A stretch of 64,000 nucleotides of DNA from the NCBI RefSeq assembly GCF_001194135.2, contig NC_068993.1:55887335-55951334 (forward strand), in the 5' to 3' direction. Source of the stretch: Octopus bimaculoides (Eukaryota). Of the stretch, positions 9,801-64,000 are shown piece by piece. Made by a program: the position numbers and the translations under genes. Within the stretch, counting starts at the first letter, position 1. Each line of letters begins with the position of its first letter. The notes below the pieces were generated by a model that worked only from the letters and a program-made list of their open reading frames with translations, ran no database searches and was not told the DNA's origin.

Positions 9801-11218
9801 AAAGATGACAGTGACTTTTTCTTAGTCAATAACTTCCAAGAATTATTAAAACATGTCTATGTTGGACTGAAGCAGAGAGCAACTTGCCCAGATGTTGGGG
9901 TCAGCACAGAAACCTAGAATCCAAATCAGCCAAAAGCACTTCCACAACCCTGGGAACCTGCATAAACAGCAGCATTATTTATATTCAGTTGTTAGAACAG
10001 GTCGGATGTTCATTTGGAACAACAATAACATATTCTTGAGTGCGAGTCTGCAGCAGAAGCAAGGCCATAATATCATATCTGTGATGGGGTTATGATTGAA
10101 ATAGTAAAGATAAGATTAATGACCAGTTTTCAATGAAACAAGCACTTACCAGAAAAAGATGTAAATCCTCCAGAGAAAATAGCATTAGGTTGAGCTGCAG
10201 CACTAAAGTTGAAGTCAGCAGCAGGTGTTGCGTTGCCAGAAGCAGAGGTCACTGAACGTTTAGCGCCACTTGGTCCATCTGTTCAATGAAGACATTCAAG
10301 TTTTGCTTAGTACAGAAATAGGGAGAAGCAGACTTATGATACGGTGGGATACAGTTTAGGCATCACAGAGAAATGACCAGCACAGTAATAAAGCCAATGG
10401 CATGGCTATTGATATCTACAAACAGTATATAAAGATGAGAATGTGTGTTTGTCTGTCTGTGTGAATCCCTAAATCTCGAGAACTACATAACCAATTTCAT
10501 TCAAATTTTACACATGCCTTACTTTGGGTCCATGTACTGTCATGGGCCCCCAAAATTTTCAACTTCTTGCCTAATGTGAGCTCAGAGAAATCTCTTATCT
10601 CTTCCGCTATTTCAGTATTACGTGTCAAAAGTAAAACAATAACATCTCTATTGTAACGTCAGACACTTTGGTACAATAATGCGAATCTGAAGCTTTTCAA
10701 AGAGGATATGAGAGGTAGGTTCATAGTCTCTTGTGTTAGAGACTATGGTGAGCAGTACCTTAGTAGAGAGAAAGAGTCACTAACACGTGCGATTATTATG
10801 TTAGTCAATCATAAAGCCAAGCCCACAGCTTCCACAACTTCTATAATATAGTTATAACACAACATACTACTGTAATATGCAGCTATAATATAACACAATT
10901 TACTTCATAAACATAAAACTATATTACATGATAAACTCCTGTAACATAGTAAGAGAGAAACTGAGATATACAGCGAAAGTCTGTAGAGAATTATAAATGA
11001 ATTACAAAATCTAACCTGCTTCATCATCACGTTCTCGCTTCAAAGGTGAAGTTAGACTAAAAGATGATTTAGGTCCCCCAGTAGAGGGAGCATTGGTATT
11101 TTTGCTACTGTCACTACCAAATATAAAGGTACTGGCAACTGAAAATAAAACAGAGATTGAGATTTATCAGTTCAATTCCTGAAAGAGACAGACAAATATT
11201 ACAAAATCAATTTCAGGG

Positions 11219-11250
<32 letters not shown>

Positions 11251-14200
11251 TTTAAATCCAAGAGGACCGAAGTTCTAGGGGAGAGGTTAAGTTGATTACA
11301 TCTACTCCAGCACTCAATTTATTGGGTCCGAAAGGATGAAAGACAAAGTTGACCTCAGCGGAATTTGAACTCAGAACATGAAGACGGACAAAATGCGAAG
11401 CATTTTACCCGGATGGCTAATGATTGCGCCAGCTCACTGCCTTAATAATAATAATAATAAAAAAATTGTGAAGGTTTAACATACCATTCTTAGTGCTGTC
11501 AGAACTCCCTGCAGTCCCAAAAATAGGTGTTGCTGATTTCTCTGTGCTGACTGAAAATGTCGGTAGAGCGGCTGATGAAGTGGTTTTTGTATCAGGAGCA
11601 GGAATCTTGAAACCAGCAGCAACAGGCTTATCTGTCCCCGTAAAACAAAACCCTGATGATGATGATGGTGATGATGAAACTGCTGTAGCAAAAGTAGAAG
11701 TAGGAGCTGTAATAGGTAGTGCTGCACTTGCAGTTGTGCAATTCAGTGAAGAACTGTTGCCACTGTTTGAAGTAGAGGGATCAGCTAAAGAAGTCAAAGG
11801 TGCCGTTGTTTCCTTCATGCTAAATGGAAAGCCATCAGATTTAGGTTGTGAAAAGACAAAACTAGCAGGCTTTGGCTGGTCATCACTTTTCTCTTTTTTA
11901 TCATCACTATTACCAAATTTAAAGTCACTGCCAGGTTTATTTCCAGGTACTGGTGATACAAAACCAAATTTAAAACCTGACGAGTTTCCAACCCCAGATT
12001 CACTTTTAGTTGAATCTTCCTGTGAAGATGGTACTCCAAATTTAAACCCATTGCTTGGAGCACTTGACACGTTGGGATCTAATTTAAAACTTGAAGAAAT
12101 TGGTGCAGTTTCAGAACCAAATTTGAAGCCTGTAGAAATTGGTGCTGCATCAGACGTGGAACTTGTACCAAATTTGAAAGCAGAAGAAATTGGTGCAGAA
12201 TCAGATGAAGAACTTGCAGCACTGAATTTGAAACCTGTTGAGGTTATGACACCAAATTTTGGTAGAACATCAACTGAACCTGAAATAAGGAAAAAAGTTG
12301 GACTGATTATTTGAGAAACGTTTAAAATTTCTTTAAGGTCTAAATAAAAAAAAGGATATTCTCATGAATAATGATGAACAAATGGATATATCTAGTAAAA
12401 CAGTAGAATCTGAGAAGCCTAAATGGTGGAATATATATTATATGATGAGGAAGAAGAGAAATGCAATGTTTTGGGGCAAAACCTTTATCAAGAGTTATCT
12501 CTCTGACAAAGGTTTTTGCCTGAAGCAAACTTTTATTCCTAAAACAGCCTAAAGCTTATTCTACTGTTTCACCCTATTTGTAATTGATATATCTACATTG
12601 TTACATCATTCAGTAATGCTGGTAGAGAACCATACTCACACCGATGCTCACTTCTGCTAGACGGTTTGGTAATGTTGAACTAATTAGAACTTATTTACAT
12701 TCGACGGATATTTGTCCTCATCTTGTTTGTATCGGCCTATATACCCTCCAGCCTTCTGGATCTGAGGAGTACCAAAGAATTGAATTCTTCATGACGACAA
12801 TGCATCCTATCGCCAAGTTCTCCTCACCTGTGACTTATTCACCATAAACAACATGGTATCACTTCCACACCTGTCCCATTCACCAGATTTAGCACCTGCA
12901 GACTTTCATCTCTTCCCCAAGATGAAAATACAGCTCAAAATCCACCGTTTTAACACAGAGCAAACTGCAGAAGGTGCTTAACACACTCATGGAAAACAAC
13001 TTCAAGACCGGATTCCAAAAGTGGCAGGAATGCTTGGATCGGTGTATTGCTGTGCAAGTTGACTATTTCAAAGGAGATGTTAAAACGTAGGTAAATAAGT
13101 TACTTTTTATTAAACATAATTATTCCGGTAACCTTTCGATACCACCTCATAATACATGTGTTTATCTGTGGATATCACTTCTGTTTCCATTGTGGCCGAT
13201 GACAGTACCGTCTGATTGGCACCCATGCCAGTGGAACGTTAAAAGCACTATTTAAGCATGATCGTTGCCAGTGCCGCTGGACTGGCCCCTGTGCCAGTGG
13301 CATGTAAAAAAGCACCATTTTGAGCATGACCGATGCCAGTACCGCCTGGCTGGTCCTCGTGCCGGTGGCACATAAAAGCACCCACTACCCTCTCGCAGTG
13401 GTTGGCGTTAGGAAGGGCATCCAGCTGTAGAAACTTTGCTAGATCAGATTGGAGACTGGTGCAGCCTTCTGGCTTGCCAGCCCTCAGTCAAACCGTCCAA
13501 CCCATGCCAGCATGGAAAGCAAATGTTAAACTATGATGATGAAAGGATCTAGTTGTTTTGTAAATGAAACAGAACTATGAAAACTCCCAGTCAGTTGAAT
13601 GAAACAATGAAGTAGGAAAGAGAATGCCTTGTTTTTTTCCCCATTTTCCCAGTCTGGAGAAAGGGGTAGTGCACAAAATTAGTAAGGACATTATATTAGA
13701 GAGCTGATTTCCAGGGAAAGGATTGGGCATAATTGTCAGTGAGAGGCTGGAGATGGGGTTGGGTGCGACAATGATGATGAGAAATAAAGAGGCAAGGGGG
13801 AGGAGATACAAGACGAGCCAGTTCTGGGTAACAAAGGTCATTACAGGAGCAATAGAAAAAAATGGAAAGCAGAGACAGCATGACTGGACGAGAGGCAGAG
13901 TGTGTCTGATAGGGATTTGACGCCAGTCAGTTTAAGTAGTGCTTCTATGGATGTAGTCCTGGATGTCTGTGTGCATAGCAGCAGGACGGTCCCAAATGTT
14001 GAGAGGAGAACTCCACTGTAGGATTCACTTCAGCTTTGTATAATATCGGCGATTGTTGGGAACTGAACTATTTTATGGCCCTGAAGAGAAGAGCTAGTCT
14101 TTTGAATGTGGTTCTAGCTGAATGGCATTCAACTTTTGGGTTTGGTGTGATGGGGTTTTCTTGTTATAAGCAGGACTTGAACTTTTTGCCGATATAAAGG

Positions 14201-17089
14201 ACAAGCTTAACATGGATCCACAAAAGAAGACAGTTTTGATTGCCATTTATGGAATTAATGCACAGAAACAAAATATAAAGGTGAGTTCAATGATAACAAA
14301 CCAATTGTTCACTTAAATTTAGAGCTCAGTCCCATAAGTTCAGCAAGCTTGCTGCTGCTACTACTACATAGCATGATGATGTGATTGCTTACTTTTAGAA
14401 TGACATTGCAGAGAAGGTGTGAGAGGCCAGATCTGGCCTTTTTGAACATAAAATAGAACATTTGGGTCAGATACGGCCAGTTTAAATGCTGTCAAGTTAA
14501 TCTCTCTTCCACTATGTCTACAACAGGGATTACGTATTTCAGATCTTGATTCTTAAAGCAGTTATGTCCCACAATACTAACTAGTCAATCATTGCTTTAA
14601 TCAGTTACTTCTACACTATAGGATTAACCAATACAACTAACCTCATGTGCGTTGTAGGTCTACATATGCAGAATTGGTCAGGGGATACTTAACAATCAAC
14701 CACTTGTGTATAATGTGTCTAGCTGTGTAGCTAGACACTGATTTGGACCAAGAGATCAGTGCATTATGTTCAACCATATCGCCATACTGGCAAAGATTAG
14801 TTACACACAGATTTGCTAAATACTGAACTAAAGAATCTTTGTAAGCTATGATGATCAACACTATGATAAATATAGTTTATACAGAAGATGTATGTTAAGT
14901 TGGCTGTGATCTGTGGTAACATTCAAATGTGCAAGCCTCATTACAGAAAAGGTAGAACTATGAAAGTGTTATAAGTTAGTAATTATAAGGTCATAAGAAG
15001 ATAATCTGACTGACCGAGTAAATTATATGGAACCATGCTTATTATAAAGATTAGGAAAATTAATAGATTAAAAAGCTATTGTTATAGTTTGGGGTATCCT
15101 CTTTTATAATGTCTATATATCAAGCAAAATTCAATATAACTAGTTTTAAAAGAGAAGCAGAGAGAGAAAGAAAGAGAGAAACTGGTATGTGAAGCTGTTA
15201 AGGAGACTATTTGCACAATAAAGGAGGTGTGATAGCAAGGATAGCGGGACACTACTAACTCCCCCTTTTCCGCATGACAGTTAAGCTGCAGCCAACAGGA
15301 GGCAAGTAGACAGCAACATGACAATATCTTACCTGAGGAATTGGCAGCAATAGTGGCAATAACTGCAGGCTTGATATGAGGGGTGTCACAAGCAATACAT
15401 TTTCTACAATGTAGTGGATTGGAGACGAGACATGTATCACATTTCCACATAGACAAGGCTTTATCAAGCTGACAGTTACTGGTCCCAACTGATTGTTTTT
15501 CAGTCTGAGACAAACAATGAACCATATGGCTAGCAGCATCTGCCAGTAAAAGAAAGCTAAATGTATTTTAATATATCGAATAAGGAAAAGATGAAACCTA
15601 CCTAACATTACATTTATATGTATGCTACTATCATTATATACACATTACGGTTGTTGATGCCATTATTATCTTCCAATATGATGTAAATGAAATTGCAGCT
15701 GTAACTACCAATAAGCAAGAAACCTAGCTTTATAGAGTTTTTCTCTCTGGTATTGTAGAAACGTGTATGATATGTTGAGGCAGGCTTTAAATAACGCAAA
15801 ATCTGTGTAACACGGTCTTGTAATTTATAAATATTTCTGAAACAGCTTATCAAATTTCCATTTTAGTATTGGTTGGACAGGTCTGCCGTGTGGTAGATCT
15901 CCATTCTTTTTGACAGGCTGTCAGTGAAATTCAACATTCTGCACTTCACCCTTGGTTTAAATCCATTTTTCCTCCACTCCAGCTTGTAGCTATTCATTAC
16001 AAGGTGAGATACCACGGACAGTATAATATTGTTAGAAATACAAACATATTCCTAACTGACATAGCAGTGAAAAGTGGAAAGAAATTAAAGAGTGTCCAAT
16101 GGTAAGACAAATAAGTTATGTGCAAAACCAAGGTCTCAAGGATTTAAACTAATCTATGAAAAGAAAAATAAAAGAAAAAAAGAAAAAGAAAAGGAAACGA
16201 ACTTGGTGGTGGTGCTGGTGGTGCATTAGGGTTGGCAGTTTGACAGGCAACACAGACGCTGTCTGATTCTTTGTTCTGTAACATACACACACTGCATTCC
16301 CATGTATCAGATTTCAAGAACTTGGCCATTAATGGATCAACTGTGAAATAAAATTACAAGTTTTAGTTAACATTTAAATCTAGACCATAGCAGTTGAAAT
16401 AGGATCAGTACATCTCCATCTTCGCTTGTTACCTATAGCATAGTCTACATCAACAAGCGAACATGAAGAGATAGAGAGAGAGAAGACATACAGAACAACA
16501 AGAGATTTCACAAAATGTCAGTCAAGAGAAGAATTCTGACATGTAACTAGACAGAATATAAAATCAGTTAACAATAAAATAAAATTAAACCAACCTTTGT
16601 CGGATGAAGTTGGGGCAACGGTTGTAGCAGGAGTAGTAGTAAAGAGTGTTGGTTTACAACCCGGTTTGGGTGTTTCACAAGCAACACACTTAGTAGCTTC
16701 TGCTTTGTTCTGAATCATACAAGTATCACACTCCCACGAACCAGACGATGGCATAAATTTTGCCATCAAGCTATCAGGTTGTAAAGATACACTAGCTGAA
16801 ATAGAAAAAACATACAGAGAATATTTAAACACAAAATTCTATTGTGGAATGGGTCTTGATTATTTGACATGACATCAAAACAGTAAAACACTTCAGAAAT
16901 ACTGGATAGAAACCTTTTGGTTGAGTTGCTGATGGCTTTGATGCTCCACAAGCCACACACTTTGTAGCTTCAGGCTTGTTTAGCAGCATACAGATCTCAC
17001 AATCCCATGAGTCAGGTGAACTGATGAACTTTGCCATCAAACTGTCAGTTACAACGCTAGACGTAGTCGTCGGAGCTGAAGAGACAATT

Positions 17090-17126
<37 letters not shown>

Positions 17127-20100
17127 TATGAATAACTAATAAGTAAAAGTAACAGAAACAGTATCAATATCAAATGGTTTAATATTTATAGCCACTAAAA
17201 AGAGAATATTAATTATTTTTTAATAAGTCCACTGGCTATTTGTAACATTAGTCCCTGATTGGGCACTGAGATTCTATGCATATCATTAGTGGAGAAATTG
17301 CTGCTATTTCCAGCCTTAGACGTCTACCACAGACAAGGCCAAGGAAGGTAAAAATCATGTGATCAGGAGGTCCCAGCGATTGATTTATCTCCCTGCTAGC
17401 GATGTAAACAAGAGTGCTTACATGCACCAAAAGCCCACGAGAGGTTCTTTCATGGTAACAACTACCGCAGTAATCAGTGTTCTAATATAACATCCACTTT
17501 TATGTGTGGATAAATAATACCTATGAATAACCAATTGAATAAACCAGAGCTTCATTGCAGTAATGAGAGATTTTTAAAGAATATTTAAAATAAAGATTCA
17601 GTGAAAAACTGAATGTATGGAAGACAGCAAATTTGCTTAGCTTGATGCATCTTCTCAAGTAGGGCAAATTGCCACAACTCCCAGTCCCTTGTCATTTCCT
17701 CAGTGAGGCCCAGCACCCGAAAATCCTTTCTCACCACTTTGTCCCACATCTTCCTGGGTCTACTCCTTCCACAGGTTCCCTCCACAATTAGAGCTTGGCA
17801 TTCCTTTAAGCAGCTGTCATCATCCAACATGGATGTCTCATTCAAACATGGAAGCTTTATCTCTAAACTGATGGTCACAAAGCTCTTATACACTAGACCA
17901 TCAATGTATGTACAATTAATGTTTTATTTTGAGAGGCTATGACTGCTTTTACTAAAAGATAAACCAAAAAAGCATTAATTGTATGCGTGTCAGTAGTCTA
18001 GTGAATAAGTGCTTTACTAAATTGAAGATCAAATTGAGTGAAATGTAGAGTAGATGGTAAAATTCAAACCATTTTCCATCTCTGAAAATGAAATTAATAG
18101 TTTGAAAAGTAACAACTTCATAGAAGCAATAACTAGTTTTACAATAATCTGGTTCTAACACTATCGGTTTCCTTGCTATTCTTTACTAGTAATAAGTTTC
18201 CTGATATCAAGACTAACTAATTGGCAACGAAATAGGTTTTACAAGAGAAATCTCGAACAATATTAAGAAATTTCAAAAACTGACAAACCTTTAGTTGAAG
18301 CTGCAGATGGTTTTCGTGTCCCACAACTAACACATTTTTTGCTTTCAGTTTTATTTGGGACCATACAAGCATCACAATCCCAAGAGTCAACTGTTAAAAA
18401 CTTGGCCATCAAAGGATCAACTTGTGCTTTGGAAGTTTCTGGAAAAACAAATACATCAAGAACAGAATAAACGCTTTGTCACACTGACAAAGTGGCAAAA
18501 TTTATATCTATCTATCTATCTATATATATATATATATTAAATTCAGCTTATGTTGAAAGTCAACAAAGTTTGCTTTAGAAGTGTTGAGATGTATTCAAAG
18601 ATAGAGATAAGGAAATAATTTTATTCTCAAATGCAGGTTAATGCTAATAACTATCAATCATTGGGAATTAGCATATTTAGTGCTATGGCCAATTTGGGGA
18701 CCTACTAGTTTTATAGTAAGTTGTTTCTTAAGGATTCCACTTGAGGTTCTGACAATTATTTGCCTTACTTAAGCCTTTCTACTATAGACACAAAGCCTGA
18801 AATTTTGGAGGAGGAGGCTAGTCGATTACATTGATCCCAGTATGAAACTGGTACTTATTTCATCAACCTCAAAAGGATGAAAAGCAAAGTTGACCTTGGC
18901 AAAATTTGAACTCAGAACGTAAAGATGGACGAAATGCCGCAAAGGATTTTGCCCAGTGTGCCAATGGTCTTACCAGTTTGCTGCCTTATTTGTCTTAGCA
19001 AGGGAACAATTGAAGGAGGGGCTATGCTATAGATCTCATGCCTAATGAATAGAGTTATAAGTACATACATGTGTGTGTGTGTGTGTGTGTGAGAAAGATT
19101 AAAAACATAGACAAATAGAGAGATAAAGAAAACATATTACCTTTTTTCTGACCACCAAGCACATCCATTACACTTCCAGTCTTCAAAGTGGAAGCAGGTT
19201 GAATCCCTCCAAAGCCGCCGCTGCTGCTGCTGCTGCCACTGCTGCTATCAACTGGTTTACTGCCAGATGTCTTTAGTGTAAAAGCTATGTTAATACATAT
19301 AAATAAAACATCACATGCATTAGAATTTATAGGGAGACACGAGGGAAACATCAAACATGTCTACATCATACAACTACATAGAGACCTAAAACAAAAGATA
19401 GGGGGGGGGAAAAAAATCCTACAGAATGCTCACCTGGTTTTTCATCAAAGATGGAAGTTGATTTTGGTTTAGGCAAAGTTGATGAAACACTGAACTGGAA
19501 CGTGTGTTTAGCAGAGTCTACAATTACTTTGTCAGGAGAACTGAATTTAAAGTCCTGAAATAAATAAATAGAAATCAATACTGAAAATAACTAGACTCCA
19601 TTTATGATGTTAAGCCTTTCAGACTTTGAGGGTTTTAAAGTTTGTGCATTTACATTTACATATATAGCATCATCATCTACATGATGGTATAGAGAAAATC
19701 TAAGATTAGTTTATCTAATGTATTGTGCTTTTAAGACGAAGGGTATGCAAGATTAATAGAAAGCAATGAGAATGAATAAGGATTACACATGATAGAGTAA
19801 CCTGAATGCGAAAGGATTCAGGAGTATTACCAGTGGCTATTGACCATGAAAGGTTGGTCAGTCCACATTACTCAATAAGGAGCCCAAGGTTGACTTCCTG
19901 GTTTCTCTGGCATATATATGTTCTTCCCTAGATGAGAGGCCTGTCTTTTGCAGGATTACTCATTTATACCAGCTGAGTGGACTGGAGCAAAGCAAAAATG
20001 AAGTGTTTTGCTCATGAACACAATGCATTGCCTGGTCCAGGAATTGAAACCACGATCTTCCAATCATGAATCCGACACCCTAACCACTAAGCCATGTGCC

Positions 20101-23100
20101 ACTGCATTGACTATGAAAGAGGTGAGTGCATATTAAAAAAAAATATATATATACATATATAAAAACTTACTGAAACTGAAGGTAAGCCTTCAGATACCAA
20201 GTTTGTATCTGGTAGTGTTGTTTGTATGGGAGTAGAGAATTTAAAATCTGATTCTGATGAATTGAAGCTAGTGTTAGAGCCGAAACTAGTGCTAGCACCA
20301 AAGCTAGGAGTTGCTGTTATAGTTGATGTTGTTGCAGTAGACTGTGCAGTTCCGCTATTAGACTTGTCAGCAGAAATAGTAGTAGTAAGAGGTGTGAAAG
20401 TAGATCTTCCGGATTGATTAGAAAAGCTGCTTGTTGATATTCCAAAAGAGAATTTGGGCACATTTGTGACAGGCAGGACAAAATCAGTCTTCAACTGTAC
20501 AGGCTCCTTTAAGTGAAAGATAGACAGGTAGATAATTAGTGAGAAACTTCAACAGGGTTAGAGAAAGAAACCAAGAAACACTTTTATCATCATGGAATAT
20601 TGTTTGATTCTGTAAAGAATAAATATAATGGCAATCTTTCGGTACGATTACCTAAATATCGGCCTTTTCCGTAAAAGTGTCTTCGGCGATCTTTACCAAA
20701 GATTGCACTTTTCCGTAAAAAGTGTTGGAGAGAAACAGGGAAACGATGTCATAACAGCGAAAGACATGCAGAGAGCGCGATTTATTTTGAAGCGTTTAGA
20801 GTTAGGGTTAGGGTTTTAGGGTTTGCATTAGGGAATTTCGTCCCTAACCGTAACCCTAACACCGCAGTGAAGATCATGCTGGTGTTATGGAAAAGGCCGA
20901 TATTTAGGAACTCGTACCGAAAGATCACCAATATAATATATAGGAGTAGATTTCCATTACATTTGCAGTAAAAGGTTTCACATCACATATTAAAACAAAC
21001 AATTTCACCTAATTAGATATAAGGAGTGTGTCACATGACAGGTCATGTCATATAAGAATACCAGAAACAATACCAATACATCAAAGAGCAAAACAAGAAA
21101 ACAAACAGAATGTGTGATTTGAGCTGTATGTTACCTCAGTTTCATCTTCCATATCTTTCATTGAATTTCCTCTTGTAGAATAACTTTTCTCTCTCTTCAT
21201 CTTACCACTAATTGGTGGTCTCCCTAGAGAAAGTGAGGGTTCTGAAACATTTGTAGCTGTTGGCTGGGTTACCAAGGGTATAGAAAAGAAACTGGATGCT
21301 GTTGCTGATGATGCTGTTGGTATCGAAGCTGTTGCTGTAGCTGCTACTGTTGTTGTTGTTTTCTCACTGCAAGGTAAGATGCTGGATTTAACTACAGGAA
21401 ACTTTCAGATCACAAAATAAAACAGAAAACTTAAAGGAATACTACACAAACCAAATGGTCAAAATTAGAGGACGATAAGGTAAGACAGGTCAATACCACT
21501 TCTACTGTACTTTTGTCACCACTCACCACATTCAGCTTCATATATTGGAAGGACTAATACTGAGATGAAATGGAAGTGATGATGATGATGATGATGACAG
21601 CTTATATGATCTAAAATAAATACATAATTCCAGATAAGAGTAATAAAGACAGTGACCATATACATTTGTCTACCATACAGTAATTATACAAGATCACCAC
21701 AAGCCAACTGTCACAAGACGATGGCAGACAAGCCTACAACTGCATGTCTATAAGATAAAGATCCTACCGCCAAAATCATTGCTTTAACTTCCACTTTACC
21801 AGATTGTCTAAAGCAAGATAATATTTTGTCATGGCATGACATCTTTTAATGGAAATTGTAAACAAAAGACACTGCTTGTATGACAGTGATGCTTGCTGAC
21901 AAAAGGTAAGGACAGACACACACACATCCATATCCACTCATAAAATTCTGGTTGGCCTGGAGCTATAGTAGAAGACATTCGCCCAAGGTGCTGTGTAGGG
22001 GGACAGAATCCAAAACTACAGTGGGGAAGCACACTTCTTGACCACACAGCCATATCAGCACCAGAGAGCATAACAGGATGAATAAGACACACGGCAGTTA
22101 CTTACACTGAGGCAGTCTGTGGAGTTGTTGCAAAGACTCTAGCCAGTTCCTTAGAAGTATCTTTCCCTGTATAGCTGCTTACCTGAAAAATTAAAGCAAA
22201 AATTAGTTCATCAATGTATATAGATTGAAATATTCAGCACTTTCATTAACAACTCATTTAAATGAGAACATCTATGCAAATCTTATGCTTTGATTTAAAT
22301 GGTGAGATAATCTAGCTGCAGAAAATAAACTCACAAGAATCCACACAGAGACAAGAGATAATTTTCTATCTCCTTGTGCTCAACCATGTGGATGGAAAAG
22401 GTATATTGCAACCTTAAATACAACATGTACATGGCCAACATAGATAAAATGAACCAAATGAGTTACTAATTAGTTGTTACACCCAGAAGTGGTGATTGAG
22501 TACTGAGAATGATTTCTCTTACTTATTATACCAAATCATGAGGCACTTAAAAGCAATGTGATCAACTACAATTCCAAGTGGATGTAGCAACACAGTTGAG
22601 TGCACTGCTATAAAGAAAGAAAAAAACCTTGCTGGGAGAAAGATAATACACTGTTATAAATTCAACATCCATCCCCATAACCAAAATATATCAAGAATGC
22701 CAACACCAGAAAAGGAAAGTTTCCAGTGACTTTTTGAGCTTTCCAATGTATGCCCAACAAGGTTCATAATATAGTGGGTTAATATCAAAAGGGTTAAATA
22801 ACTGAGGTAGTATTTCCAATAATGGCAGCATTATGTTTTTGGTCTTTCATACAGATGGTTGACAGCAATAATTCCAACTGTTCACAATTTAATACTACTA
22901 TCAAAGGAAAATGAACATCATAAATTACACAGTGGCTAGCTTGGGCAGTAAATATAAGTGAAGTTCTGTAATATCATCTCAAATATGCTGATGCACTTGA
23001 CTGGAGAGGTGGAAAAAAAAAAAGTAACATTCTCAAGTATAATATATACCCCAAATATTTAGGTTTAAAAGCTGAAAAAAAAAAGTGTACATTATACAGG

Positions 23101-48753: not shown

Positions 48754-49122
48754 GGACACGCAATGGCCCAGTGGTTAGGGCAGCGGACTCGCGGTCATAG
48801 GATCGTGGTTTCGATTCCCAGACCGGGCATTGTGAGTGTTTATTGAGTGAAAACACCTAAAGCTCCACGAGGCTCCGGCAGGGGATGGTGGCAAACCCTG
48901 CTGTACTCTTTCACCACAACTTTCTTCCTGTTTCTGTTGTGCCTGTATTTCAAAGGGGCCAGCTTTGTCACACTGTGTCACGCTGAATTTCCCCGAAAAC
49001 TCCGTTAAGGGTACACGTGTCTGTGGAGTGCTCAGCCACTTGCACGTTAATTTCACGAGCAGGCTGTTCCGTTGATCGGATCAACTGGAACCCTCGACGT
49101 CGTAAGCGACTGAGTGCCAACA
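48754..49122 (+). mobile_element. tRNA-derived SINE, near full length (related: about 44995-45297 -, 19850-20100 -, 57900-58090 -, 60725-61050 +)
   Basis: Head GCAATGGCCCAGTGGTTAGGGCAGCGGACTC..GGTTTCGATTCCCAGACC; shared tail GTGGAGTGCTCAGCCACTTGCAC..GATCAACTGGAACCCTC. Confidence 0.75.
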
Positions 49123-49639
49123 ATATATATATATATATATATCTTTTACTTGTTTCAGTCATTTGACTGCAACTATACGGAGAGCCACCTTGTAGGGTTT
49201 TAGTCAAACAAATTGACCCCAGGGCTTATTTTTTTTAAAGCCTAATACTTATTCTATCAGTCTCTAATGCTGAGCCACTAAGTTACAGGGACTTAAACAC
49301 ACCAACACAAGTCATCGAGTGTTGATGGGGGACAAACACAGATACAAAGACACACACACATAGATATATACAAATAGATATATATACGACAGGCTTCTTT
49401 CAGTTTCCGTCTCCAAATTCCCCTGACAATTTACCTGTTTGTCTGTGTGTCTGTGTTTATATATATGTAGCCAGTCTAAAGAGGGAGAGGTACTTGTCAC
49501 AGTCATCTCTTTAACAGCGTTGTATCTCAATTCAGCACTGGCTTAATGTATGGATATTTGTATTTGTGCCATAGTGAAACCGCAACCCCTACTGATTACC
49601 AAATGTCCATGCATAAAATCCTGTGATTAACTATTTCAG

Positions 49640-49719: not shown

Positions 49720-52072
49720 GTAAACTAATCGACTGAGAATGAAGTACATTCAGTAAATCTAAACCACACACTAAGAATTAGCATGTGATGTCAAGATAAG
49801 GACACACACACACACACACACAAATACATTCATATACATAAATATATAAATACATGTATCATCATCATCATTATCACCACTGTCATTTAACATCTGTTTA
49901 CCCATGCTGGTATGGGTCAGATGATTTGACTGGATTTAACACTTCACAAAACTTCACTGTGCTCCAATGTTTGATTTGATGTGGTTTCTCTATGGCTGGA
50001 TGCCCTTCCTAACACCAACCACTTTATAGATTCTACTGGGGCCTTTTCTTTTTGTGGACCAGCCTGCAACTTTCAAGATCAAGGGCCCAAAGAAGCCCCT
50101 ATAACTGGAGGAGAACAGTAGAGAGAAGGTGCAATGATTGTCAGTAGGATGATGAGAGAGAGTAAATTATGAAGAGAGGAATAGACTGACAGTTGTGAGA
50201 GGGTGGCAGTGGAGAGACTAACATAGAAGACACTATTTGTGGGAAGAGTATGGATGGAAAAGAGGATAGGGAAGGGCTTTATGTCAGGGGTTTGTGAGAA
50301 AGGGAGGGACAGAGTACTTGATGTGATAAAGGCTCTTGAGTAGGGTGTTCCCAGGTTAACCTAAATTATAAGGGCAAGTATGAATGGAAAGTGTGAGAGA
50401 AAGGGAACATGAAAAAGATAAATGGAGGCTCTGAGGTATTGAGTAGAGGCATATGGTCAAGTGGTTCGGGTGTTGGACTCATGAGCATAAGATTGTGGTT
50501 TCATTTCCTGGACCAGGCAATGCATTGAGTTCTTGAGTAAAACATTTCATTTCACTTTGCTCTAAATCCACTTAGCTGGCAAAAATGAGTAATCCTGCAA
50601 CAGACCAGCACCCTGTTCAGGGGGTAAATATATATACACTGTAGAAACTGAGAAACCAGCCCTTGTGAGTCTATAGGTCTCAAGAAGGATGCTTTTGTTG
50701 AGGTATGGAGAGAATCATTGATGGAAAGGGAAGGTGGCTGTGGAAGTGGGCCAGAGATGGAGAAGTGAAAGTGTATTGAGGTGATGGAGGAACTGTAGGG
50801 AGAGGATGGTGAAAGAAAATGAGGAAGAATATGGGGGAGCAGTGGGTAAGTGCAGTGAGAGCAGGGAGTGAAAGTGATATTGGAGGGCCCTGTAGAGGTA
50901 GGGTGATGAGAGCATCCCAGACATGGAGGCTGATGGGAGAGGACAGTGAGAGAAAATGGTAGTGGAGACAGTGAGAGAAAATGGTAGTGGAGACAGTGAG
51001 AGAAAGGAAGGCTGGAGAACACCTAAGTGGGAAGGAAGAGAGGGTGAATACAGCAAAGAGCATCGAGGTGAGAAGCAGACAGGGAGAGGAAGCTGTTGTG
51101 GAGTTGAGAGGAGGACGACAGGTGAGAACAGTGAAAGCATCCCAGGCAGGGAGATTGAGGAGAAAGGACAGGTAAAGAGAGGTAGGGGAGGAGCAGTGGA
51201 TGAATAACTGTAAGAGTCTGCCAGCTACCAACACTTCCTTGACTAATGTTTTTTCTATCACGCTTGCTTGAAAGAACAGGGTTTTCTCCAGTGTGTCACC
51301 AAATTACAATCAATTGTTGCCTACCTTGTGAGGTTCACTTTCTTGAGATCATGTTTTTCATGGTCCTTTTCTTCCATAGTTACCTTCCATTTTCAGTGCT
51401 TGATACTTGAGCTTTTTTACTGTGTCCTGTCTCTATGAAGCTTTTGGTCAGTTGAGGACTAAAGTAAAATACATTTGCTTGGCATGGCTATGTGTCAAGA
51501 AGCTTGCTTCTCAGCCACATGGTTCTAGGTTCAGTCCCACTCTGTGACACCTTGGGTAAGTGTCTTCTATTATAACCCCAGCCTGACCAAAACCTTGTGA
51601 GTGGATTTGGTAGACAAACTGAAAGAAGTTTCTTATATATGTGTGTGTGTGTGTGTGCCACCTGGGCAACGTTGGGTATCACTAATGCAAGTATATTATA
51701 AAAATGGTTTTTACATTTAATCTTATCAGTTACTTATTTGGATTAATTTTTCTTGTTCTGTTTCTTCTTCTTCTTCTTCTTCTTCCCACCCAGCTCTCTT
51801 TTAATATTTAACACCATGTTTCATGCATACATACATACATACATACATACATAAATGCATGCATACTTACATACACACACACACACATACATATACACAC
51901 ATACATATACACACATGTATATGTGTAGCTATGTATTCTGATTTGTTCCCTAATCTATCTGGAGGCAGGAGAGGGTGTATGACTCAGTTAAAGGTTAATC
52001 TGAAGTACTTGAGATACAAAACTTATCATGTTTGATTTATGTTTTATATTTACCTGCTCACCCCCACATCAG

Positions 52073-57192: not shown

Positions 57193-57789
57193 CCATTGCT
57201 CTCGGTAAGCTCAGGTCTCAGTTGGCAGCTTCAGGACATGGCTTTACAGCACCCTGTGATGTGATGTGTAACAGGAGCCACTGGTGTGTACAGAGTCATC
57301 TTGACTTGGAACAAGGTATTTCCAAGACGTCCCAGCAAACAAAGTGCTATAATAGAAAGAATTGTGGGATTTGAACTAAAACACCCTCGTCATCCTCCAT
57401 CTTACAATTTTCTCACAAGAAATCAATAATCATCCCTTCATATGAAGTCGTTGAATCAACAAAACTCTTTCTTGAAATCATAATTAACAAAATCAGAGAT
57501 TATTCTAAATAAATATTTACAAGAATATGTTTTTTAAAATCTTTCTTTTGTCTATATGTACAGCAAAGCCGTAACACAATCAAATAAGTTCCTGAAGTTG
57601 CTGCACTAAAGGCATATAAGAAACGGTAATTGGTTCAAGAATTTTCTGCAGGTGTGGCAAGAAGTTTGCTTCCCAGCCACATAGTTCTGGTTTCAGTCCT
57701 AGTGTATGGCACCTTGAGTAAGTGTCTGCAACAGCCTCAGGCTGACCAAAGCCTTGTGAATGGATTTGGTAGATAGAAACTGAAAGAAG

Positions 57790-57889
57790 NNNNNNNNNNN
57801 NNNNNNNNNNNNNNNNNNNNNNNNNNNNNNNNNNNNNNNNNNNNNNNNNNNNNNNNNNNNNNNNNNNNNNNNNNNNNNNNNNNNNNNNN
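57790..57889. other. Assembly gap (N)
   Basis: 100-N run. Confidence 1.
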
Positions 57890-58549: not shown

Positions 58550-58654
58550 AATTATGAATTAAAAACATTTTTATTATGAGGTCAACATAAATACAAAATG
58601 GTTTGGTTGGTGCTGTTTCTGTAAATTTTGTTTTAACCAAAGAACCAAGGATCT
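58550..58654 (-). other. COX6C: Putative non-coding terminal 3'UTR exon of COX6C
   Basis: Strong acceptor ttttatttttattattgcag; AATAAA at 58570-58575 (minus); upstream donor GAATT|GTGAGT at 59734; 3' end approximate. Confidence 0.5.
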
Positions 58655-58894
58655 CTGCAATAATAAAAATAAAAGAAAGAAATTAAGAATCTGTTTCTGC
58701 AGATTCGATACTTTAACATTTATCTTCATTCAGAGAGGCCTGGTGGTTACGGTATTGCACTCACAACAGCAAGATAGTGGTTTCAAATTCCAGACCAGGG
58801 CTGTGGAGTTGGAGTCAGAAACAATTAAGGAGGAGTCGGAGTCGGTAAAACAGACCACAATCACTTGCTGTGCTTTTGAGCAAAACATGTCATT

Positions 58895-59034
58895 GCTTAC
58901 CTGTACATGCTTACCTGTACATGCTTACCTGTACATGCTTACCTGTACATGCTTACCTGTACATGCTTACCTGTACATGCTTACCTGTACATGCTTACCT
59001 GTACATGCTTACCTGTACATGCTTACCTGTACAT
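58895..59034. repeat. 14-bp minisatellite, 10 perfect copies (GCTTACCTGTACAT)
   Basis: Units every 14 nt from 58895 to 59021. Confidence 0.97.
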
Positions 59035-59047
59035 GTGTACTCTTTAC

Positions 59048-59260
59048 TCTTTTACTTGTTTCAGTCATTTGACTGTGGCCATGCTGGAGCACCGCCTTTA
59101 GTCGAGCAAATTGACCCAATGACTTATTCTTTGTAAACCTAGTACTTATTCTATCTGTCTCTTTTGCTGAACCACTAAGTTACGGGGACGCAAACACACC
59201 ACCATCAGTTGTCAAGCGATGTTGGGGGGACAAACACAGACACACAAACATATATATATA
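59048..59260. mobile_element. SINE family copy (related about 49143-49410 and, inverted, 37250-37400)
   Basis: TTTTACTTGTTTCAGTCATTTGACTG..GGAGCACCGCCTTTAGTCGAGCAAAT..GGGGACAAACACAGA. Confidence 0.7.
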
Positions 59261-59748
59261 TGTGGTTGGCGTTAGGAAGGGCATCCAACTGTAGAAACTC
59301 TGCCAAATTAGATTGGAGCCTAGTGCAGCCATCTGGTTCACCAGTCCTCAGTCAAATCGTCCAACCCATGCTAGCATGGAAAGTGGACGTTAAACGATGG
59401 TGATGATGATATATATATATACAACGGGCTTCTTTCAGTTTCCGTCTACCAAATCCACTCACAAGGCTTTGGTCAGCCCGAGGATATAGTAGAAGAAGGT
59501 CAATGGGGAATGCATTTCATGGAATAGAATTTCAAATATGGTAACCTTTTCTGGAATGCAATATCTCTGTAATATAGAGGATTCTAGTATACGACTGCAC
59601 ACTGAGGAAGTGGTTATTCATTGGAGTTGACCTTGGGTGTGTAGTTGAGCATTCACTCTTATTTGAGTTGAGTCTGAAAATAGCAAGAGAAATATAATAG
59701 AAGTTCTACTATCTAGAACATTGAAATACTCACAATTCTCTAATTCCA

Positions 59749-59842
59749 TTAAAAGTCTGTGTTTATGTTTCCCTCAGCATCTACACATTGGAAAACCCCA
59801 GCTTTTTTCATTCTCTGAAAGTCAGCTTCAGCATCATAAGTT
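59749..59842 (-). CDS. COX6C: COX6C second coding exon (TYDAEADFQRMKKAGVFQCVDAEGNINTDF*)
   Basis: ccttacag acceptor, phase 2; matches YD..DFEEMRKAGIFQSV; total 86 aa. Confidence 0.9.
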
Positions 59843-61234: not shown

Positions 61235-61401
61235 TTGTAGAATTCAGCATATTTAGCTTTTCTTGGGAGTTGAACTCCAAATTTCCAGGCCAAACCAAAT
61301 GAAATAGAAACAGCTGTTCCAATTGCTAGTTCTAAAGGAAGTCTGGAGGTGAGAAGATTTCTCATCTTGGGTTTTGGTAATTTGGTTACAGTAGATGCCA
61401 T
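61235..61401 (-). CDS. COX6C: Cytochrome c oxidase subunit 6C, first coding exon
   Basis: MASTVTKLPKPKMRNLL..WKFGV..RKAKYAEFY matches LPKPRMRGLL..YKF..RKKAYADFY; ATG directly after ctgttttag acceptor; AA|GTATGT, phase 2. Confidence 0.9.
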
Positions 61402-61608: not shown

Positions 61609-61633
61609 TATATACATATATAAATGAAATTTG

Positions 61634-61763
61634 GATAAATTTTCAGATTAACACCCGCACGATTTTCACTAGGGTGTTAGAGTTAGGGTCAGGTAATTCC
61701 GTCCCTAACCCTGACCTTAAAACCCTAGTGAAGATCGTGCGGGTGTTAATCTGAAAATTTACC
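61634..61763. mobile_element. 130-bp fold-back Merlin-like MITE
   Basis: Near-total palindrome, 8-bp TSD GAAATTTG, TTAGGG/CCCTAA core; right half resembles 20820-20890. Confidence 0.8.
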
Positions 61764-64000
61764 GAAATTTGTGTGGTTACTCAAATTGCTAAAGATAGTA
61801 GCCAAATCTGTTAGACTAAATAACAAACGTGCAGGCCATGATTAGAACACCTTTGATCACAGCTAACCTGGGGCTAAAGAATATCTGCACACTACGACGA
61901 AGAGAATTTGAGTTGTTCATCCATTGACGGATAAGAGAAGTAAAAAAGAAAGATCGATATCTGATGTATAACATTTTACTTTCATTTGGACTGAAATATA
62001 GAGAATTTATTGGTGTTTTAAAGTAGGTAATACTGAAATTTATTTTATCATTGACTCTCGAAAGTGGAAGGACAAAACCCACGGAGAAATATATAGCCTC
62101 CTCGTGGAGTGTGGTGAGAACAAAGCGAAGGACTAAACACATTATAGAATTTAGATTGGTCTTTTTCGTTTCTGTGGTCAATCAACTCCGACTCGGTCGA
62201 TTTTACAATCTTCCGGGGTTGATACATTAAGTAACATACATTCGTATTTTATCGTTCAAAAGTCGATGAAATAACGATCTTCACCGCGTTACTGGGTGGA
62301 TATTTTCGCTTATCTATAACGAGAAGATTATATTGTCGTTTCTTCCTGCCTAGAAAAGTAGTCAAGCAAGGTTGTTGAACAAAATAGAACTCGCCATTCA
62401 GAAACTAGTTTGAAAATTGGTTCCCGGAAATGTTTTCCCTTTCTGTTCAATTTCTTAAATTAGAATACAAAATAACCACATAGGAATATTCAACGTTCTG
62501 AAATTAATGAAATAGTTGTTTAAAGGATACAATACAGACTAATTAATAAAAAAAGGAGTGGCGTGGTAACGAGGAATAATTTTGACTTTATTTAAATGAA
62601 TAATATATTACTTTTAATTATCAACCTGAATCTATATAGATTAGACAGGTTGTTGTTTAACGAGAAAACAGTTTGATTCTGCAGGACAATGGTAAGGACA
62701 TTCCAGCCATGACCATACAGTGTATTCAGGACATTATCGGTGTCCTTCGTTTTCCCTTTTAAGACTGTTGTGTGTGATTCCAAGGATATTTAGCAACTAT
62801 TTCTTTCAAATCGAGTGACCATATAAAGATTGATCCGTGATAGAGGCTTCTTTTTTTTTTTTTTTGAGGTTAATGTAATTAATGAGAGTAAATGAGAAGT
62901 TACAGGTGAGAGCGATGAATATGAGGAAGAGGTCATTTGAGGTTTGTAGGTAACAGTTTGAAAGTCAAGATTAACAGACCGGAGATATACCTCCAAATAT
63001 GAATTAGAAGCAGCGCTAGTACACACACACTAACCATTAAGCACATCAACATGAAAATAGCATGGCATTTAGATAGATTACTTACGGTGTTTGGTGATGG
63101 CGTGTCTCAGAGGCAACAGACAACGAGTTTAACCTTCACTGCAGAAGGAAGACACAAGCTATCCCAGAATACACCCCTATAAAGCGAGGTAACCGAATAT
63201 TAAATATAAACTTCCGGCAAGGGAAATAACTCTTACGTAATTTCAATAGCAGCCAAGGGAGACTACTGGTAGTCAACAGAGCCCGTGAGATGACCTCTTC
63301 GAAGGCATTTGAGTTACTAGAAACAGCAACCAAATGTATCCCAAATTAAGCTACATTGCTTAAAAACGGTCGAGGATATATTAAACTATATGAGAACTGT
63401 CTGCTGAATCAAGACTAACCTTAAAAAAACTAAAAAACTAAAACTTAAAAAACTAACAGTTAAAAAAAGCAATTGATTGACCAAAAAACCTGGTGTTAAA
63501 TAATAACATCTCTTATATATAAATCGAAGCGGAAGTCTGAATCAATGTGCGTGCTTTAGTGGGGTCGCTGGCTCTACTAGAAATAGCAGCGTAATATTCT
63601 TCAATCTACAAAAAAACAAAAAAAAAGACACATTGAATAATGCCGTCCTAGGGATACAGCACGTTTGAATAAAAGACAGAGTAATCATGCCCGGAATGTC
63701 TTTGATCGAAGGTTTGCTGTTATTAGATCTGTTATGACTGCAGTCACAACTGTATAGCTAAGTGATTTCACATTCGATCCCACGCACGGGTCTCCAGTAG
63801 ATAGAGTCTTGTTAGTGAAACTTGGTAGATGAAAACTGCGTGGAAGTCCGCTTGAAGACCAGGGCCGTCTTAGCAGAATTATAAACCTCTGGACAAATCA
63901 ATGCACTTGGTCTCATAGAATTTATTTATTGACAGCAAGCGGGCACATACATAGATCAGAATTTCCCCTGAGACCAGGGCAACTGCTTAGTATGAGCCAG

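What the first reader, a model, noticed from the sequence alone, without database searches (positions are those of the whole stretch)
58895..59034. Ten perfect tandem 5' splice-site consensus copies inside the COX6C 3'UTR intron
Seen: read on the COX6C sense strand the unit is ATGTACAG|GTAAGC, matching 8 of 9 positions of the U1 consensus CAG|GTAAGT, and also a YAG|GT motif of the recursive-splice type. It lies in the putative intron 58655-59733, whose real donor (GAATT|GTGAGT) has a poorer exonic side. A second strong acceptor (tctcttgctattttcag) sits at 59673. Established: a junction 15 nt after a stop escapes NMD, while one more than about 50-55 nt downstream can trigger it, and clustered U1 sites can suppress polyadenylation. 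Inference: splicing 59673 to an array donor (first at 59027, a 647-nt exon) would make an NMD-type poison UTR exon, and a VNTR could tune expression of a respiratory-chain subunit.
Basis: partly seen in the sequence, partly recalled or inferred. Interest (0 to 1): 0.7.

Follow-up and report, generated by a model that had tools for sequence, protein, structure and literature searches.

The report
Intronic 14-bp repeat mimicking splice donors
A perfect ten-copy, 14-base tandem repeat between two SINE fragments in the 3'UTR intron of the octopus COX6C gene spells a near-consensus splice donor in every copy; it is real, young and lineage-specific, but nothing available here shows that the cell uses it.

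Summary
Window 58894-59035 holds 10.1 perfect copies of a 14-bp unit. On the COX6C sense (minus) strand each copy reads ATGTACAG|GTAAGC, matching U1 at 8/9 core and 10/11 extended positions. COX6C is confirmed by Pfam and is 100% identical to the Octopus bimaculoides protein. The 3'UTR intron is supported by comparison: Argonauta hians also has a GTAAGT donor exactly 15 nt after the stop, an acceptor and a conserved AATAAA terminal exon.

The array lies where a 5'-truncated sense-oriented SINE ends and an opposite-strand SINE fragment breaks off. It is absent from the Argonauta intron. It has no internal divergence, although its host SINE is 13-23% diverged from the other copies in the window.

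The best reading is a young, lineage-specific minisatellite at a SINE tail that is normally removed with the intron. Its donor-like units would be accidental decoy U1 sites, at most causing low-level cryptic splicing.

The recursive-splice idea fails, because there is no pyrimidine tract. Copy number is not secure in this gap-containing assembly.

The parts
58894..59035 (-). 14-bp x 10.1 perfect tandem array. On the sense strand (ATGTACAG|GTAAGC)10 gives ten near-consensus 5' splice-site motifs, with the G of each GT at 59026, 59012 ... 58900.
   Evidence: TRF, exact-match scan, donor matrix and U1 complementarity, direct reading.
59036..59500 (-). 5'-truncated tRNA-derived SINE ('SINE B') in the same orientation as COX6C. 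Its 3' terminus (...CAGTCAAATGACTGAAACAAGTAAAAGAGTAAAGAGTACAC) abuts the array. It carries a nested unrelated repeat at 59262-59410, flanked by (TA)n.
   Evidence: BLAST against other copies in the window. Tail identical over 27 nt to the copy at 49143-49169, which then ends in (AT)n. The tRNA-like head is seen in the copies at 51480-51630 and 57650-57790.
58737..58893 (+). Fragment of a second tRNA-derived SINE ('SINE A') on the opposite strand, with A- and B-box-like head. Its homology to other copies stops at or just inside the array. It is 3'-truncated.
   Evidence: BLAST to copies at 20031-20093, 50461-50517 and 48765-48837; alignment. ARAGORN and Rfam find no intact tRNA.
58655..59733 (-). 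Inferred COX6C 3'UTR intron, 1,079 nt, from GTGAGT to ttgcAG. The two SINE fragments with the nested repeat (622 nt) plus the array (142 nt) make up 764 nt of it.
   Evidence: Splice motifs. Same position and architecture in Argonauta hians, L002 13089-13861. Part lengths. No transcript evidence was available.
59734..59842 (-). Last coding exon of COX6C (…TYDAEADFQRMKKAGVFQCVDAEGNINTDF*). Stop TAA at 59751-59749, followed by 15 nt of 3'UTR.
   Evidence: Translation and Pfam. 80% nucleotide identity to Argonauta across the exon, stopping 7 nt into the intron.
61235..61401 (-). First coding exon of COX6C (ATG at 61401; donor CAA|GTATGT).
58550..58654 (-). Inferred terminal 3'UTR exon. It holds the only canonical poly(A) signal after the stop (AATAAA starting at 58575). 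The 3' end given here is approximate.
   Evidence: Poly(A) signal scan. Conserved blocks including AATAAAAATGTT in the Argonauta alignment.
59174..59196 (-). SINE-B-derived acceptor-like site tgtgtttgcgtccccgtaacttag|TGG, first exon base 59174. With the first array donor it would give a 148-nt pseudo-exon. This is a prediction only.
   Evidence: Acceptor scan.
59673..59700 (-). Using it would need a 60-nt mini-intron from the true donor. This is a prediction only.
   Evidence: Acceptor scan.
59043..59056 (-). Two AGTAAA poly(A)-signal variants in the SINE-B tail, 13-21 nt upstream of the array.
   Evidence: Hexamer scan.

Best explanation
The array is a young, lineage-specific minisatellite. 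It arose by slippage or unequal exchange at the 3' end of a sense-oriented, 5'-truncated SINE, at the point where that SINE meets a fragment of an opposite-strand SINE. Both lie inside the conserved 3'UTR intron of Octopus bimaculoides COX6C.

The unit happens to spell CAG|GTAAGC. The GTAA may come from the GTAAAAGA/GTAAAGA repeats of the SINE tail, but that link is only weakly supported. The pre-mRNA therefore carries ten decoy U1-binding sites.

In the normal pathway the short last coding exon (109 nt) is defined by its own acceptor and the GTGAGT donor 15 nt after the stop. The whole 1,079-nt intron, array included, is then removed. The resulting junction is too close to the stop to trigger EJC-dependent NMD.

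The decoy sites are expected to be mostly silent. At most they would give low-level cryptic products, such as a SINE-derived pseudo-exon starting at 59174 or 59673, or an extended exon. They could also hinder export of transcripts that keep the intron.

Shown: the array, its flanks, the gene, the comparative support for the intron, and the absence of the array from Argonauta. Inferred: all RNA-level behaviour.
For: - The array is perfect and unique in the window.
- It abuts the 3' terminus of a SINE. The only other copy with an intact tail in the window shares those last 27 nt and then carries a different simple repeat, (AT)n. The tails of this family are therefore variable repeat-prone sites.
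- Mollusc SINEs commonly end in terminal tandem repeats (PMC4758252).
- The host SINE copy is only 77-87% identical to the other copies and carries a nested insertion. The ten units have no differences at all. At even about 7% divergence, some 10 substitutions would be expected over 142 nt. The array is therefore much younger than the SINE, or is kept uniform by homogenisation. This is an inference.
- The Argonauta hians intron is at the same position (15 nt after the stop) but lacks the array and both SINEs. Homology stops 7 nt into the intron.
- No canonical poly(A) signal lies in the intron, and no recursive-splice motif is present.
- The array RNA can fold on itself (MFE -55.8 kcal/mol, z = -5.8), which would compete with U1 binding.
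- An ORF across the array has no homologues.
Against: - No RNA data could be examined, so silence of the sites is assumed, not shown.
- The array donors are far stronger than the true donor (11.9 against 6.1 bits).
- They lie closer to the acceptor. In classical competition experiments (own knowledge) that position favours the downstream site.
- Plausible upstream acceptors exist within 148-647 nt.
- The coincidence of a consensus donor in the unit has about 0.08% probability per strand for a random 14-mer of this genome.
- Similarity of the unit to the SINE tail is weak (p about 0.07), so the proposed origin of the seed is not proven.
Confidence: 0.6

Rival explanations
1. The array GTs act as real 5' splice sites in a meaningful share of transcripts. 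They would pair with an upstream cryptic acceptor (59673, or the SINE-derived 59174) to make a 3'UTR cassette exon. Alternatively they would extend the last coding exon. Either way an exon junction would lie more than 55 nt after the stop, making an NMD-type isoform. Copy number would then modulate COX6C output.
For: - Ten sites with 11.9-bit matrix score and 10/11 U1 complementarity, against 6.1 bits for the true donor.
- Acceptor-like sites at 59673 (82% pyrimidines) and 59174 (71%), giving exons of 647 nt or 148 nt.
- Intronic VNTR length is known to alter nearby splice choice in humans (PMC10078293, PMC6692358).
Against: - No junction evidence could be obtained.
- The array is absent from Argonauta and very young, so no conserved function is indicated.
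- A 647-nt internal exon preceded by a 60-nt intron is atypical.
- Self-pairing of the array may hide the sites.
- EJC-dependent NMD has not been demonstrated in molluscs (own knowledge).
- A housekeeping respiratory subunit would be harmed by efficient use of these sites.
Confidence: 0.12
2. The array works as a U1 snRNP landing pad without being spliced. It would suppress cleavage at the weak AGTAAA signals brought in by the SINE tail just upstream (telescripting-like). It could also mark transcripts that retain the intron for nuclear retention and decay through the 5'SS-motif / U1-70K pathway.
For: - Two AGTAAA variants lie 13-21 nt upstream of the array on the sense strand.
- There are ten strong U1 motifs.
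- Intact 5'SS motifs in mature RNAs cause nuclear retention in human cells (PMC9074902).
Against: - There is no canonical AATAAA or ATTAAA in the intron.
- Intronic polyadenylation here would lie after the stop codon and be harmless.
- Sites 14 nt apart cannot all bind U1 at once (own knowledge of the U1 footprint).
- There is no conservation.
- The pathway has not been tested in molluscs.
Confidence: 0.1
3. The array, or at least its copy number of ten, is an assembly artefact of a short-read scaffold.
For: - The window holds 1,552 N.
- One gap starts exactly at the internal microsatellite of another copy of the same SINE family.
- A 142-bp perfect array is about the length of a short read.
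- Others have reported missing or wrong 3'UTR regions in this genome assembly (bioRxiv 10.1101/2022.06.24.497555).
Against: The array has unique, well-defined flanks on both sides and no adjacent gap. An assembler would more likely collapse such an array than invent it.
Confidence: 0.08
4. The units are recursive splice (ratchet) sites that remove the intron in steps.
For: Each unit contains CAG|GT.
Against: - Pyrimidine content upstream of each AG is 35%.
- There is no match to Y5+N0-4YAGGT anywhere in the intron (motif from PMC10156609).
- The intron is only 1,079 nt.
Confidence: 0.01

Closest known systems
3'-terminal tandem repeats and minisatellites at SINE/LINE tails (for example (CA)n, (CAAA)n, (CACCT)n and (CACT)n on mollusc SINEs; PMC4758252)
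   Same: The array directly abuts the 3' end of a SINE in the SINE's own orientation. The tail region is itself made of short GTAAA(A)GA repeats preceded by poly(A)-signal-like hexamers.
   Different: The unit is 14 bp, not 2-5 bp. The only other intact tail of this family in the window carries (AT)n instead. The perfect identity of the units contrasts with an old, diverged SINE body, so this looks like a local later expansion rather than the family's standard tail.
Intronic VNTRs associated with splicing variation (human spl-TRs, PMC10078293; MIR137HG 15-bp VNTR, PMC6692358; ABCA7 intronic VNTR, cited in PMC10078293)
   Same: It is an intronic tandem repeat of 14-15 bp close to splice sites, with a potential length-dependent effect on splice choice.
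   Different: In those cases an effect on RNA was measured. Here nothing was measured. Here every unit is itself a near-consensus donor, which is not the described mechanism in those cases.
Pseudo-5' splice sites and decoy U1 sites (for example the F1/F2 pseudo-sites of the Drosophila P-element third-intron silencer; own knowledge) and 5'SS-motif nuclear retention (PMC9074902)
   Same: These are sequences with strong U1 complementarity that are not used for splicing but can bind U1 and change RNA fate.
   Different: Those elements lie in exons or in mature RNAs and have demonstrated protein partners. This array is intronic, tenfold repeated, unconserved and untested.
Exonisation of transposable elements (Alu-type pseudo-exons; own knowledge)
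   Same: A SINE supplies an acceptor-like site (59174) and adjacent sequence supplies a strong donor, the usual recipe for a new low-inclusion exon.
   Different: The donor comes from a minisatellite rather than from a point mutation in the element. The exon would lie in a 3'UTR, so its only effect would be on RNA stability.
Recursive splice sites (ratchet points)
   Same: Both have a juxtaposed YAG|GTAAG.
   Different: This array has no pyrimidine tract and lies in a short intron. The defining motif is not met.

Membership tests
Minisatellite / VNTR | Head-to-tail copies of a unit of about 10-100 bp | tested here: met
   Period 14, 10.1 copies, 100% identity.
Minisatellite / VNTR | Copy number varies between individuals | not testable with these tools
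No second O. bimaculoides assembly was reachable.
SINE 3'-terminal tandem repeat | Lies directly at the 3' end of the element, in its orientation | tested here: met
   The SINE-B tail ...AAACAAGTAAAAGAGTAAAGAGTACAC is followed at once by the array.
SINE 3'-terminal tandem repeat | The same repeat unit ends other copies of the family | tested here: not met
   The only other intact tail in the window (49143-49169) is followed by (AT)n. The 14-mer occurs nowhere else in the window. The sample is only two tails.
SINE 3'-terminal tandem repeat | The unit is derived from the tail sequence | tested here: inconclusive
   Local alignment of the flank to the unit scores 7; 7% of random 24-mers do as well.
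Functional alternative 5' splice site / poison exon | Good match to the U1 consensus | tested here: met
   CAG|GTAAGC, 11.9 bits, 10/11 complementarity. Only 11 other sites in both strands of the window score as high.
Functional alternative 5' splice site / poison exon | A partner acceptor upstream within exon-size distance | tested here: met
   In silico only: first exon bases 59174 (148 nt), 59370 (344 nt) and 59673 (647 nt).
Functional alternative 5' splice site / poison exon | Spliced reads that use the site | not testable with these tools
Functional alternative 5' splice site / poison exon | Conservation in related species | tested here: not met
   Absent from the orthologous Argonauta hians intron.
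Recursive splice site | Pyrimidine tract plus YAG directly before GT (Y5+N0-4YAGGT) | tested here: not met
   35% pyrimidines upstream; no motif hit in the intron (PMC10156609).
U1 telescripting target | A poly(A) signal nearby whose use U1 would suppress | tested here: inconclusive
   No AATAAA or ATTAAA in the intron. Two AGTAAA variants lie 13-21 nt upstream of the array.
COX6C (Pfam PF02937) | Profile match above the curated cut-off | tested here: met
   93.6 bits against a cut-off of 22, E = 8.2e-27. 100% identical to O. bimaculoides A0A0L8IBK3.
NMD-escaping 3'UTR intron | Exon junction less than about 50-55 nt after the stop | tested here: met
   15 nt in Octopus and in Argonauta, from inferred splice sites. 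The rule is taken from the NMD literature (for example PMC13323391). No cDNA was seen.

The most novel reading that the evidence does not exclude
A copy-number-variable array of consensus 5' splice sites inside a conserved, NMD-neutral 3'UTR intron acts as a dosage dial for a respiratory-chain subunit. The more units present, the more U1 is captured. More COX6C pre-mRNA is then diverted into an NMD-sensitive SINE-derived 3'UTR exon, or into nuclear retention. The array's self-complementary fold could also make it a target for the heavy A-to-I editing of octopus, which would weaken the GUAAG motifs in some tissues only.
Probability: 0.05. Interest if true: 0.65.

Novelty: new member of a known kind. 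Interest (0 to 1): 0.25.

Why it matters
If the sites are silent, as I expect, this shows how repeat turnover at SINE tails can create a dense cluster of very strong decoy splice donors inside a housekeeping gene without harm. It also illustrates how much context, not motif strength, decides splice-site use. If they are used, it would be a natural case of a VNTR made of splice donors. That would allow a direct test of competition between a weak distal donor and ten strong proximal ones, and of EJC-type NMD in a mollusc. The more solid by-product is comparative. COX6C keeps a 3'UTR intron exactly 15 nt after the stop in two octopod lineages, which is the kind of intron expected to be tolerated because it cannot trigger NMD.

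Tried and rejected
As P0001 it has no contig on record.
- The protein search returned no other Octopus COX6C. No other coding exon was spotted within 10 kb of the array that could serve as an anchor. Orthologous loci of other Octopus species could therefore not be fetched.
- The 109-aa ORF across the array was used as bait for other contigs with the same array: no hit.
- An exact scan of metagenome contigs for a two-unit dimer gave 0 hits.
- Rfam and ARAGORN found nothing on the intron. The SINE heads are too diverged to score as tRNA.
- I tested whether the missing 3' part of SINE A lies beyond SINE B, which would date the array to the SINE-B insertion. There was no significant match.
- I tested whether the array flanks are degenerate copies of the unit. 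The right flank is weak (p about 0.07) and the left flank shows none (p about 0.41).
- The decapod cDNA-like contig L001 has no alignable 3'UTR, so it says nothing about the intron.
- L002 was not exposed to the Python sandbox. I pasted the relevant 1 kb by hand instead.
- The donor matrix is my own approximate human-like matrix. MaxEntScan and SpliceAI were not available.

Full report
OBSERVATION

Tandem Repeats Finder gives 58894-59035, period 14, 10.1 copies, 100% matches and no indels. Its score of 284 is the highest of all 43 rows for the 64-kb window. The unit TGCTTACCTGTACA occurs ten times back to back and nowhere else in the window, even with one mismatch allowed; 0.05 matches are expected by chance.

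It matches CAG|GTAAGT at 8 of 9 positions. Because +7 and +8 are A and U, nine of the ten copies match the U1 5' end at 10 of 11 positions and the last copy at 9 of 11.

THE GENE AND THE INTRON

The minus strand encodes an 86-aa protein from two coding exons, 61401-61235 and 59842-59752, with the stop at 59751-59749. The protein matches Pfam COX6C (PF02937) at 93.6 bits, E = 8e-27. It is 100% identical to Octopus bimaculoides A0A0L8IBK3.

- Fifteen nucleotides after the stop comes ATT|GTGAGT, with the G at 59733.
- 1,079 nt further on comes tttcttttatttttattattgcag|AGATCC, with first exon base 58654.
- About 80 nt after that lies the only canonical AATAAA downstream of the stop, at 58575.

I could not see a transcript, but the comparison is strong. 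In Argonauta hians (L002) the stop is followed by 15 nt and then GTAAGT. After 773 nt there is tttttcatttcag|AGAC, then a terminal segment that shares blocks with the octopus one, including AATAAAAATGTT. Nucleotide homology between the two species runs through the last coding exon and stops 7 nt into the intron. The 3'UTR intron is therefore inferred with good confidence and is conserved in position across octopods.

WHAT SURROUNDS THE ARRAY

The intron is mostly interspersed repeats (for lengths).

SINE B.
- From about 59500 down to 59036 on the sense strand runs a 5'-truncated copy of an abundant tRNA-derived SINE. Copies with the tRNA-like head are at 51480-51630 and 57650-57790.
- This copy is interrupted at 59262-59410 by a nested element of another family, flanked by (TA)n.
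- Its last 27 nt, CAGTCAAATGACTGAAACAAGTAAAAG, are identical to those of the copy at 49143-49169. That copy then continues into (AT)n. The COX6C copy instead continues AGTAAAGAGTACAC and then goes straight into the array.

SINE A.
- On the other side, 58737-58893 is the head and part of the body of a different tRNA-derived SINE on the plus strand.
- Its homology to other copies ends at, or a few bases inside, the array. Its missing 3' part is not found beyond SINE B.

The array thus sits exactly between the 3' terminus of one SINE and the break point of another. Mollusc SINEs are known to end in terminal tandem repeats, sometimes preceded by poly(A)-signal-like hexamers (PMC4758252). The SINE-B tail here has two AGTAAA hexamers and GTAAAAGA/GTAAAGA repeats just before the array.

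Direct similarity of the 14-mer to either flank is weak: p about 0.07 on the SINE-B side and 0.41 on the SINE-A side. The origin of the seed is therefore only suggested, not shown.

AGE AND CONSERVATION

The host SINE copy is 77-87% identical to the other copies in the window and has had time to receive a nested insertion. The ten units of the array do not differ at a single base. If the array were as old as the SINE, about ten or more substitutions would be expected in 142 nt. The expansion, or its last homogenisation, is therefore recent; this is an inference.

The Argonauta intron has neither the array nor SINE A or B. It shares only scattered copies of the nested-repeat family, at other positions. 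No other Octopus genome could be reached.

HOW UNUSUAL IS THE DONOR MATCH?

I used an approximate human-like donor matrix of my own; MaxEntScan was not available. The array sites score 11.9 bits, against 6.1 for the true 3'UTR donor and 5.6 for the coding-exon donor. Outside the array only 7 minus-strand and 4 plus-strand sites in the window reach 11.9.

Tandemising every 14-mer of the window shows that 0.08% reach this score on a given strand, and 0.16% on either strand. For one array this is a notable coincidence. In a large repeat-rich genome it should occur many times by chance (my own estimate), and the GTAA-rich SINE tail raises the prior. It is not evidence of selection.

Recursive splicing is contradicted.
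- The AG of each unit has only 35% pyrimidines upstream.
- The intron has no match to the minimal recursive motif Y5+N0-4YAGGT (motif from PMC10156609).
- The intron is short.

The poison-exon idea is coherent but untested.
- The acceptor at 59673 is strong (82% pyrimidines).
- Using it requires a 60-nt intron and a 647-773-nt internal exon.
- The scan turned up a more ordinary candidate: a SINE-B-derived site, ccccgtaacttag|TGG, with first exon base 59174. It would give a 148-nt exon with the first array donor.
- Either exon would put a junction more than 55 nt after the stop. Whether that triggers decay in a mollusc is unknown (own knowledge; the rule as in PMC13323391).

Suppression of polyadenylation by U1 has no canonical target in the intron. 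Only the two AGTAAA variants of the SINE tail are present.

Two further points bear on site use.
- The array RNA can pair with itself through its UGUACA palindromes (MFE -55.8 kcal/mol, z = -5.8, with many alternative registers). Sites 14 nt apart also cannot all hold a U1 particle at once (own knowledge). Both would blunt the sites.
- Against my preferred reading, strong donors nearer the acceptor tend to win in classical competition assays (own knowledge). Some use of these sites would therefore not surprise me.

LIMITS

Every statement about RNA is therefore inference.

The window comes from a gap-containing scaffold with 1,552 N. One gap begins exactly at the microsatellite of another SINE-B copy. 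Others have noted faulty 3'UTR regions in this genome assembly (bioRxiv 10.1101/2022.06.24.497555). The copy number of ten should be checked with long reads.

VERDICT

The recursive-splice element is wrong. The regulatory story is unsupported and, given the youth, position and lack of conservation of the array, unlikely.

The most probable account is a young minisatellite at a SINE tail that by accident spells ten decoy splice donors and is removed with the intron (confidence 0.6). Meaningful use as donors gets 0.12, a non-splicing U1 platform 0.10, an assembly artefact 0.08 and recursive splicing 0.01.

It is a new member of a known kind, namely intronic tandem repeats and TE-derived cryptic splice signals. 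Interest is 0.25. The regulated VNTR-dial reading keeps a probability of about 0.05.

Noticed in passing
window 59733 / L002 13089 / L003 about 6081: The COX6C 3'UTR intron starts exactly 15 nt after the stop in both Octopus bimaculoides and Argonauta hians. The chiton Liolophura sinensis has a GTAAGT 45 nt after its stop, a 'tttgcag' about 370 nt on, and then AATAAA. A short-distance, NMD-neutral 3'UTR intron may therefore be old in mollusc COX6C.
   Followed up: partly
window 61627-61693 and 61704-61770: A 67-nt inverted repeat, 88% complementary with a 10-nt loop, lies 230-370 nt upstream of the COX6C ATG exon. One arm resembles the first 60 nt of the decapod COX6C contig L001. It could be a MITE or a conserved promoter-proximal element.
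   Followed up: no
window 57790-57889: A 100-N assembly gap begins exactly at the internal microsatellite of another copy of the same SINE family. The assembly breaks at these repeats, so repeat lengths in it are not secure.
   Followed up: no
window 59043-59056 (minus strand): The SINE-B tail carries two AGTAAA poly(A)-signal variants just upstream of the array. The array itself contains ten UGUA motifs, the CFIm-type upstream element.
   Followed up: partly
window 59174 (minus strand): A SINE-derived acceptor-like site, ccccgtaacttag|TGG, would give a 148-nt pseudo-exon with the first array donor.
   Followed up: partly
window about 8500-20500 (minus strand): Exons of an FG-repeat protein with RanBP2-type zinc-finger motifs (WECDTCMIQNKAEATKCVACETPKP), probably a NUP153-like nucleoporin.
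   Followed up: no
window 59262-59410 and L002 13173-13784: The repeat nested in SINE B (…ccatgctagcatgggttggac…) belongs to a family that also populates the Argonauta COX6C intron several times, at non-orthologous positions and in both orientations. It is an old and widespread octopod repeat.
   Followed up: partly
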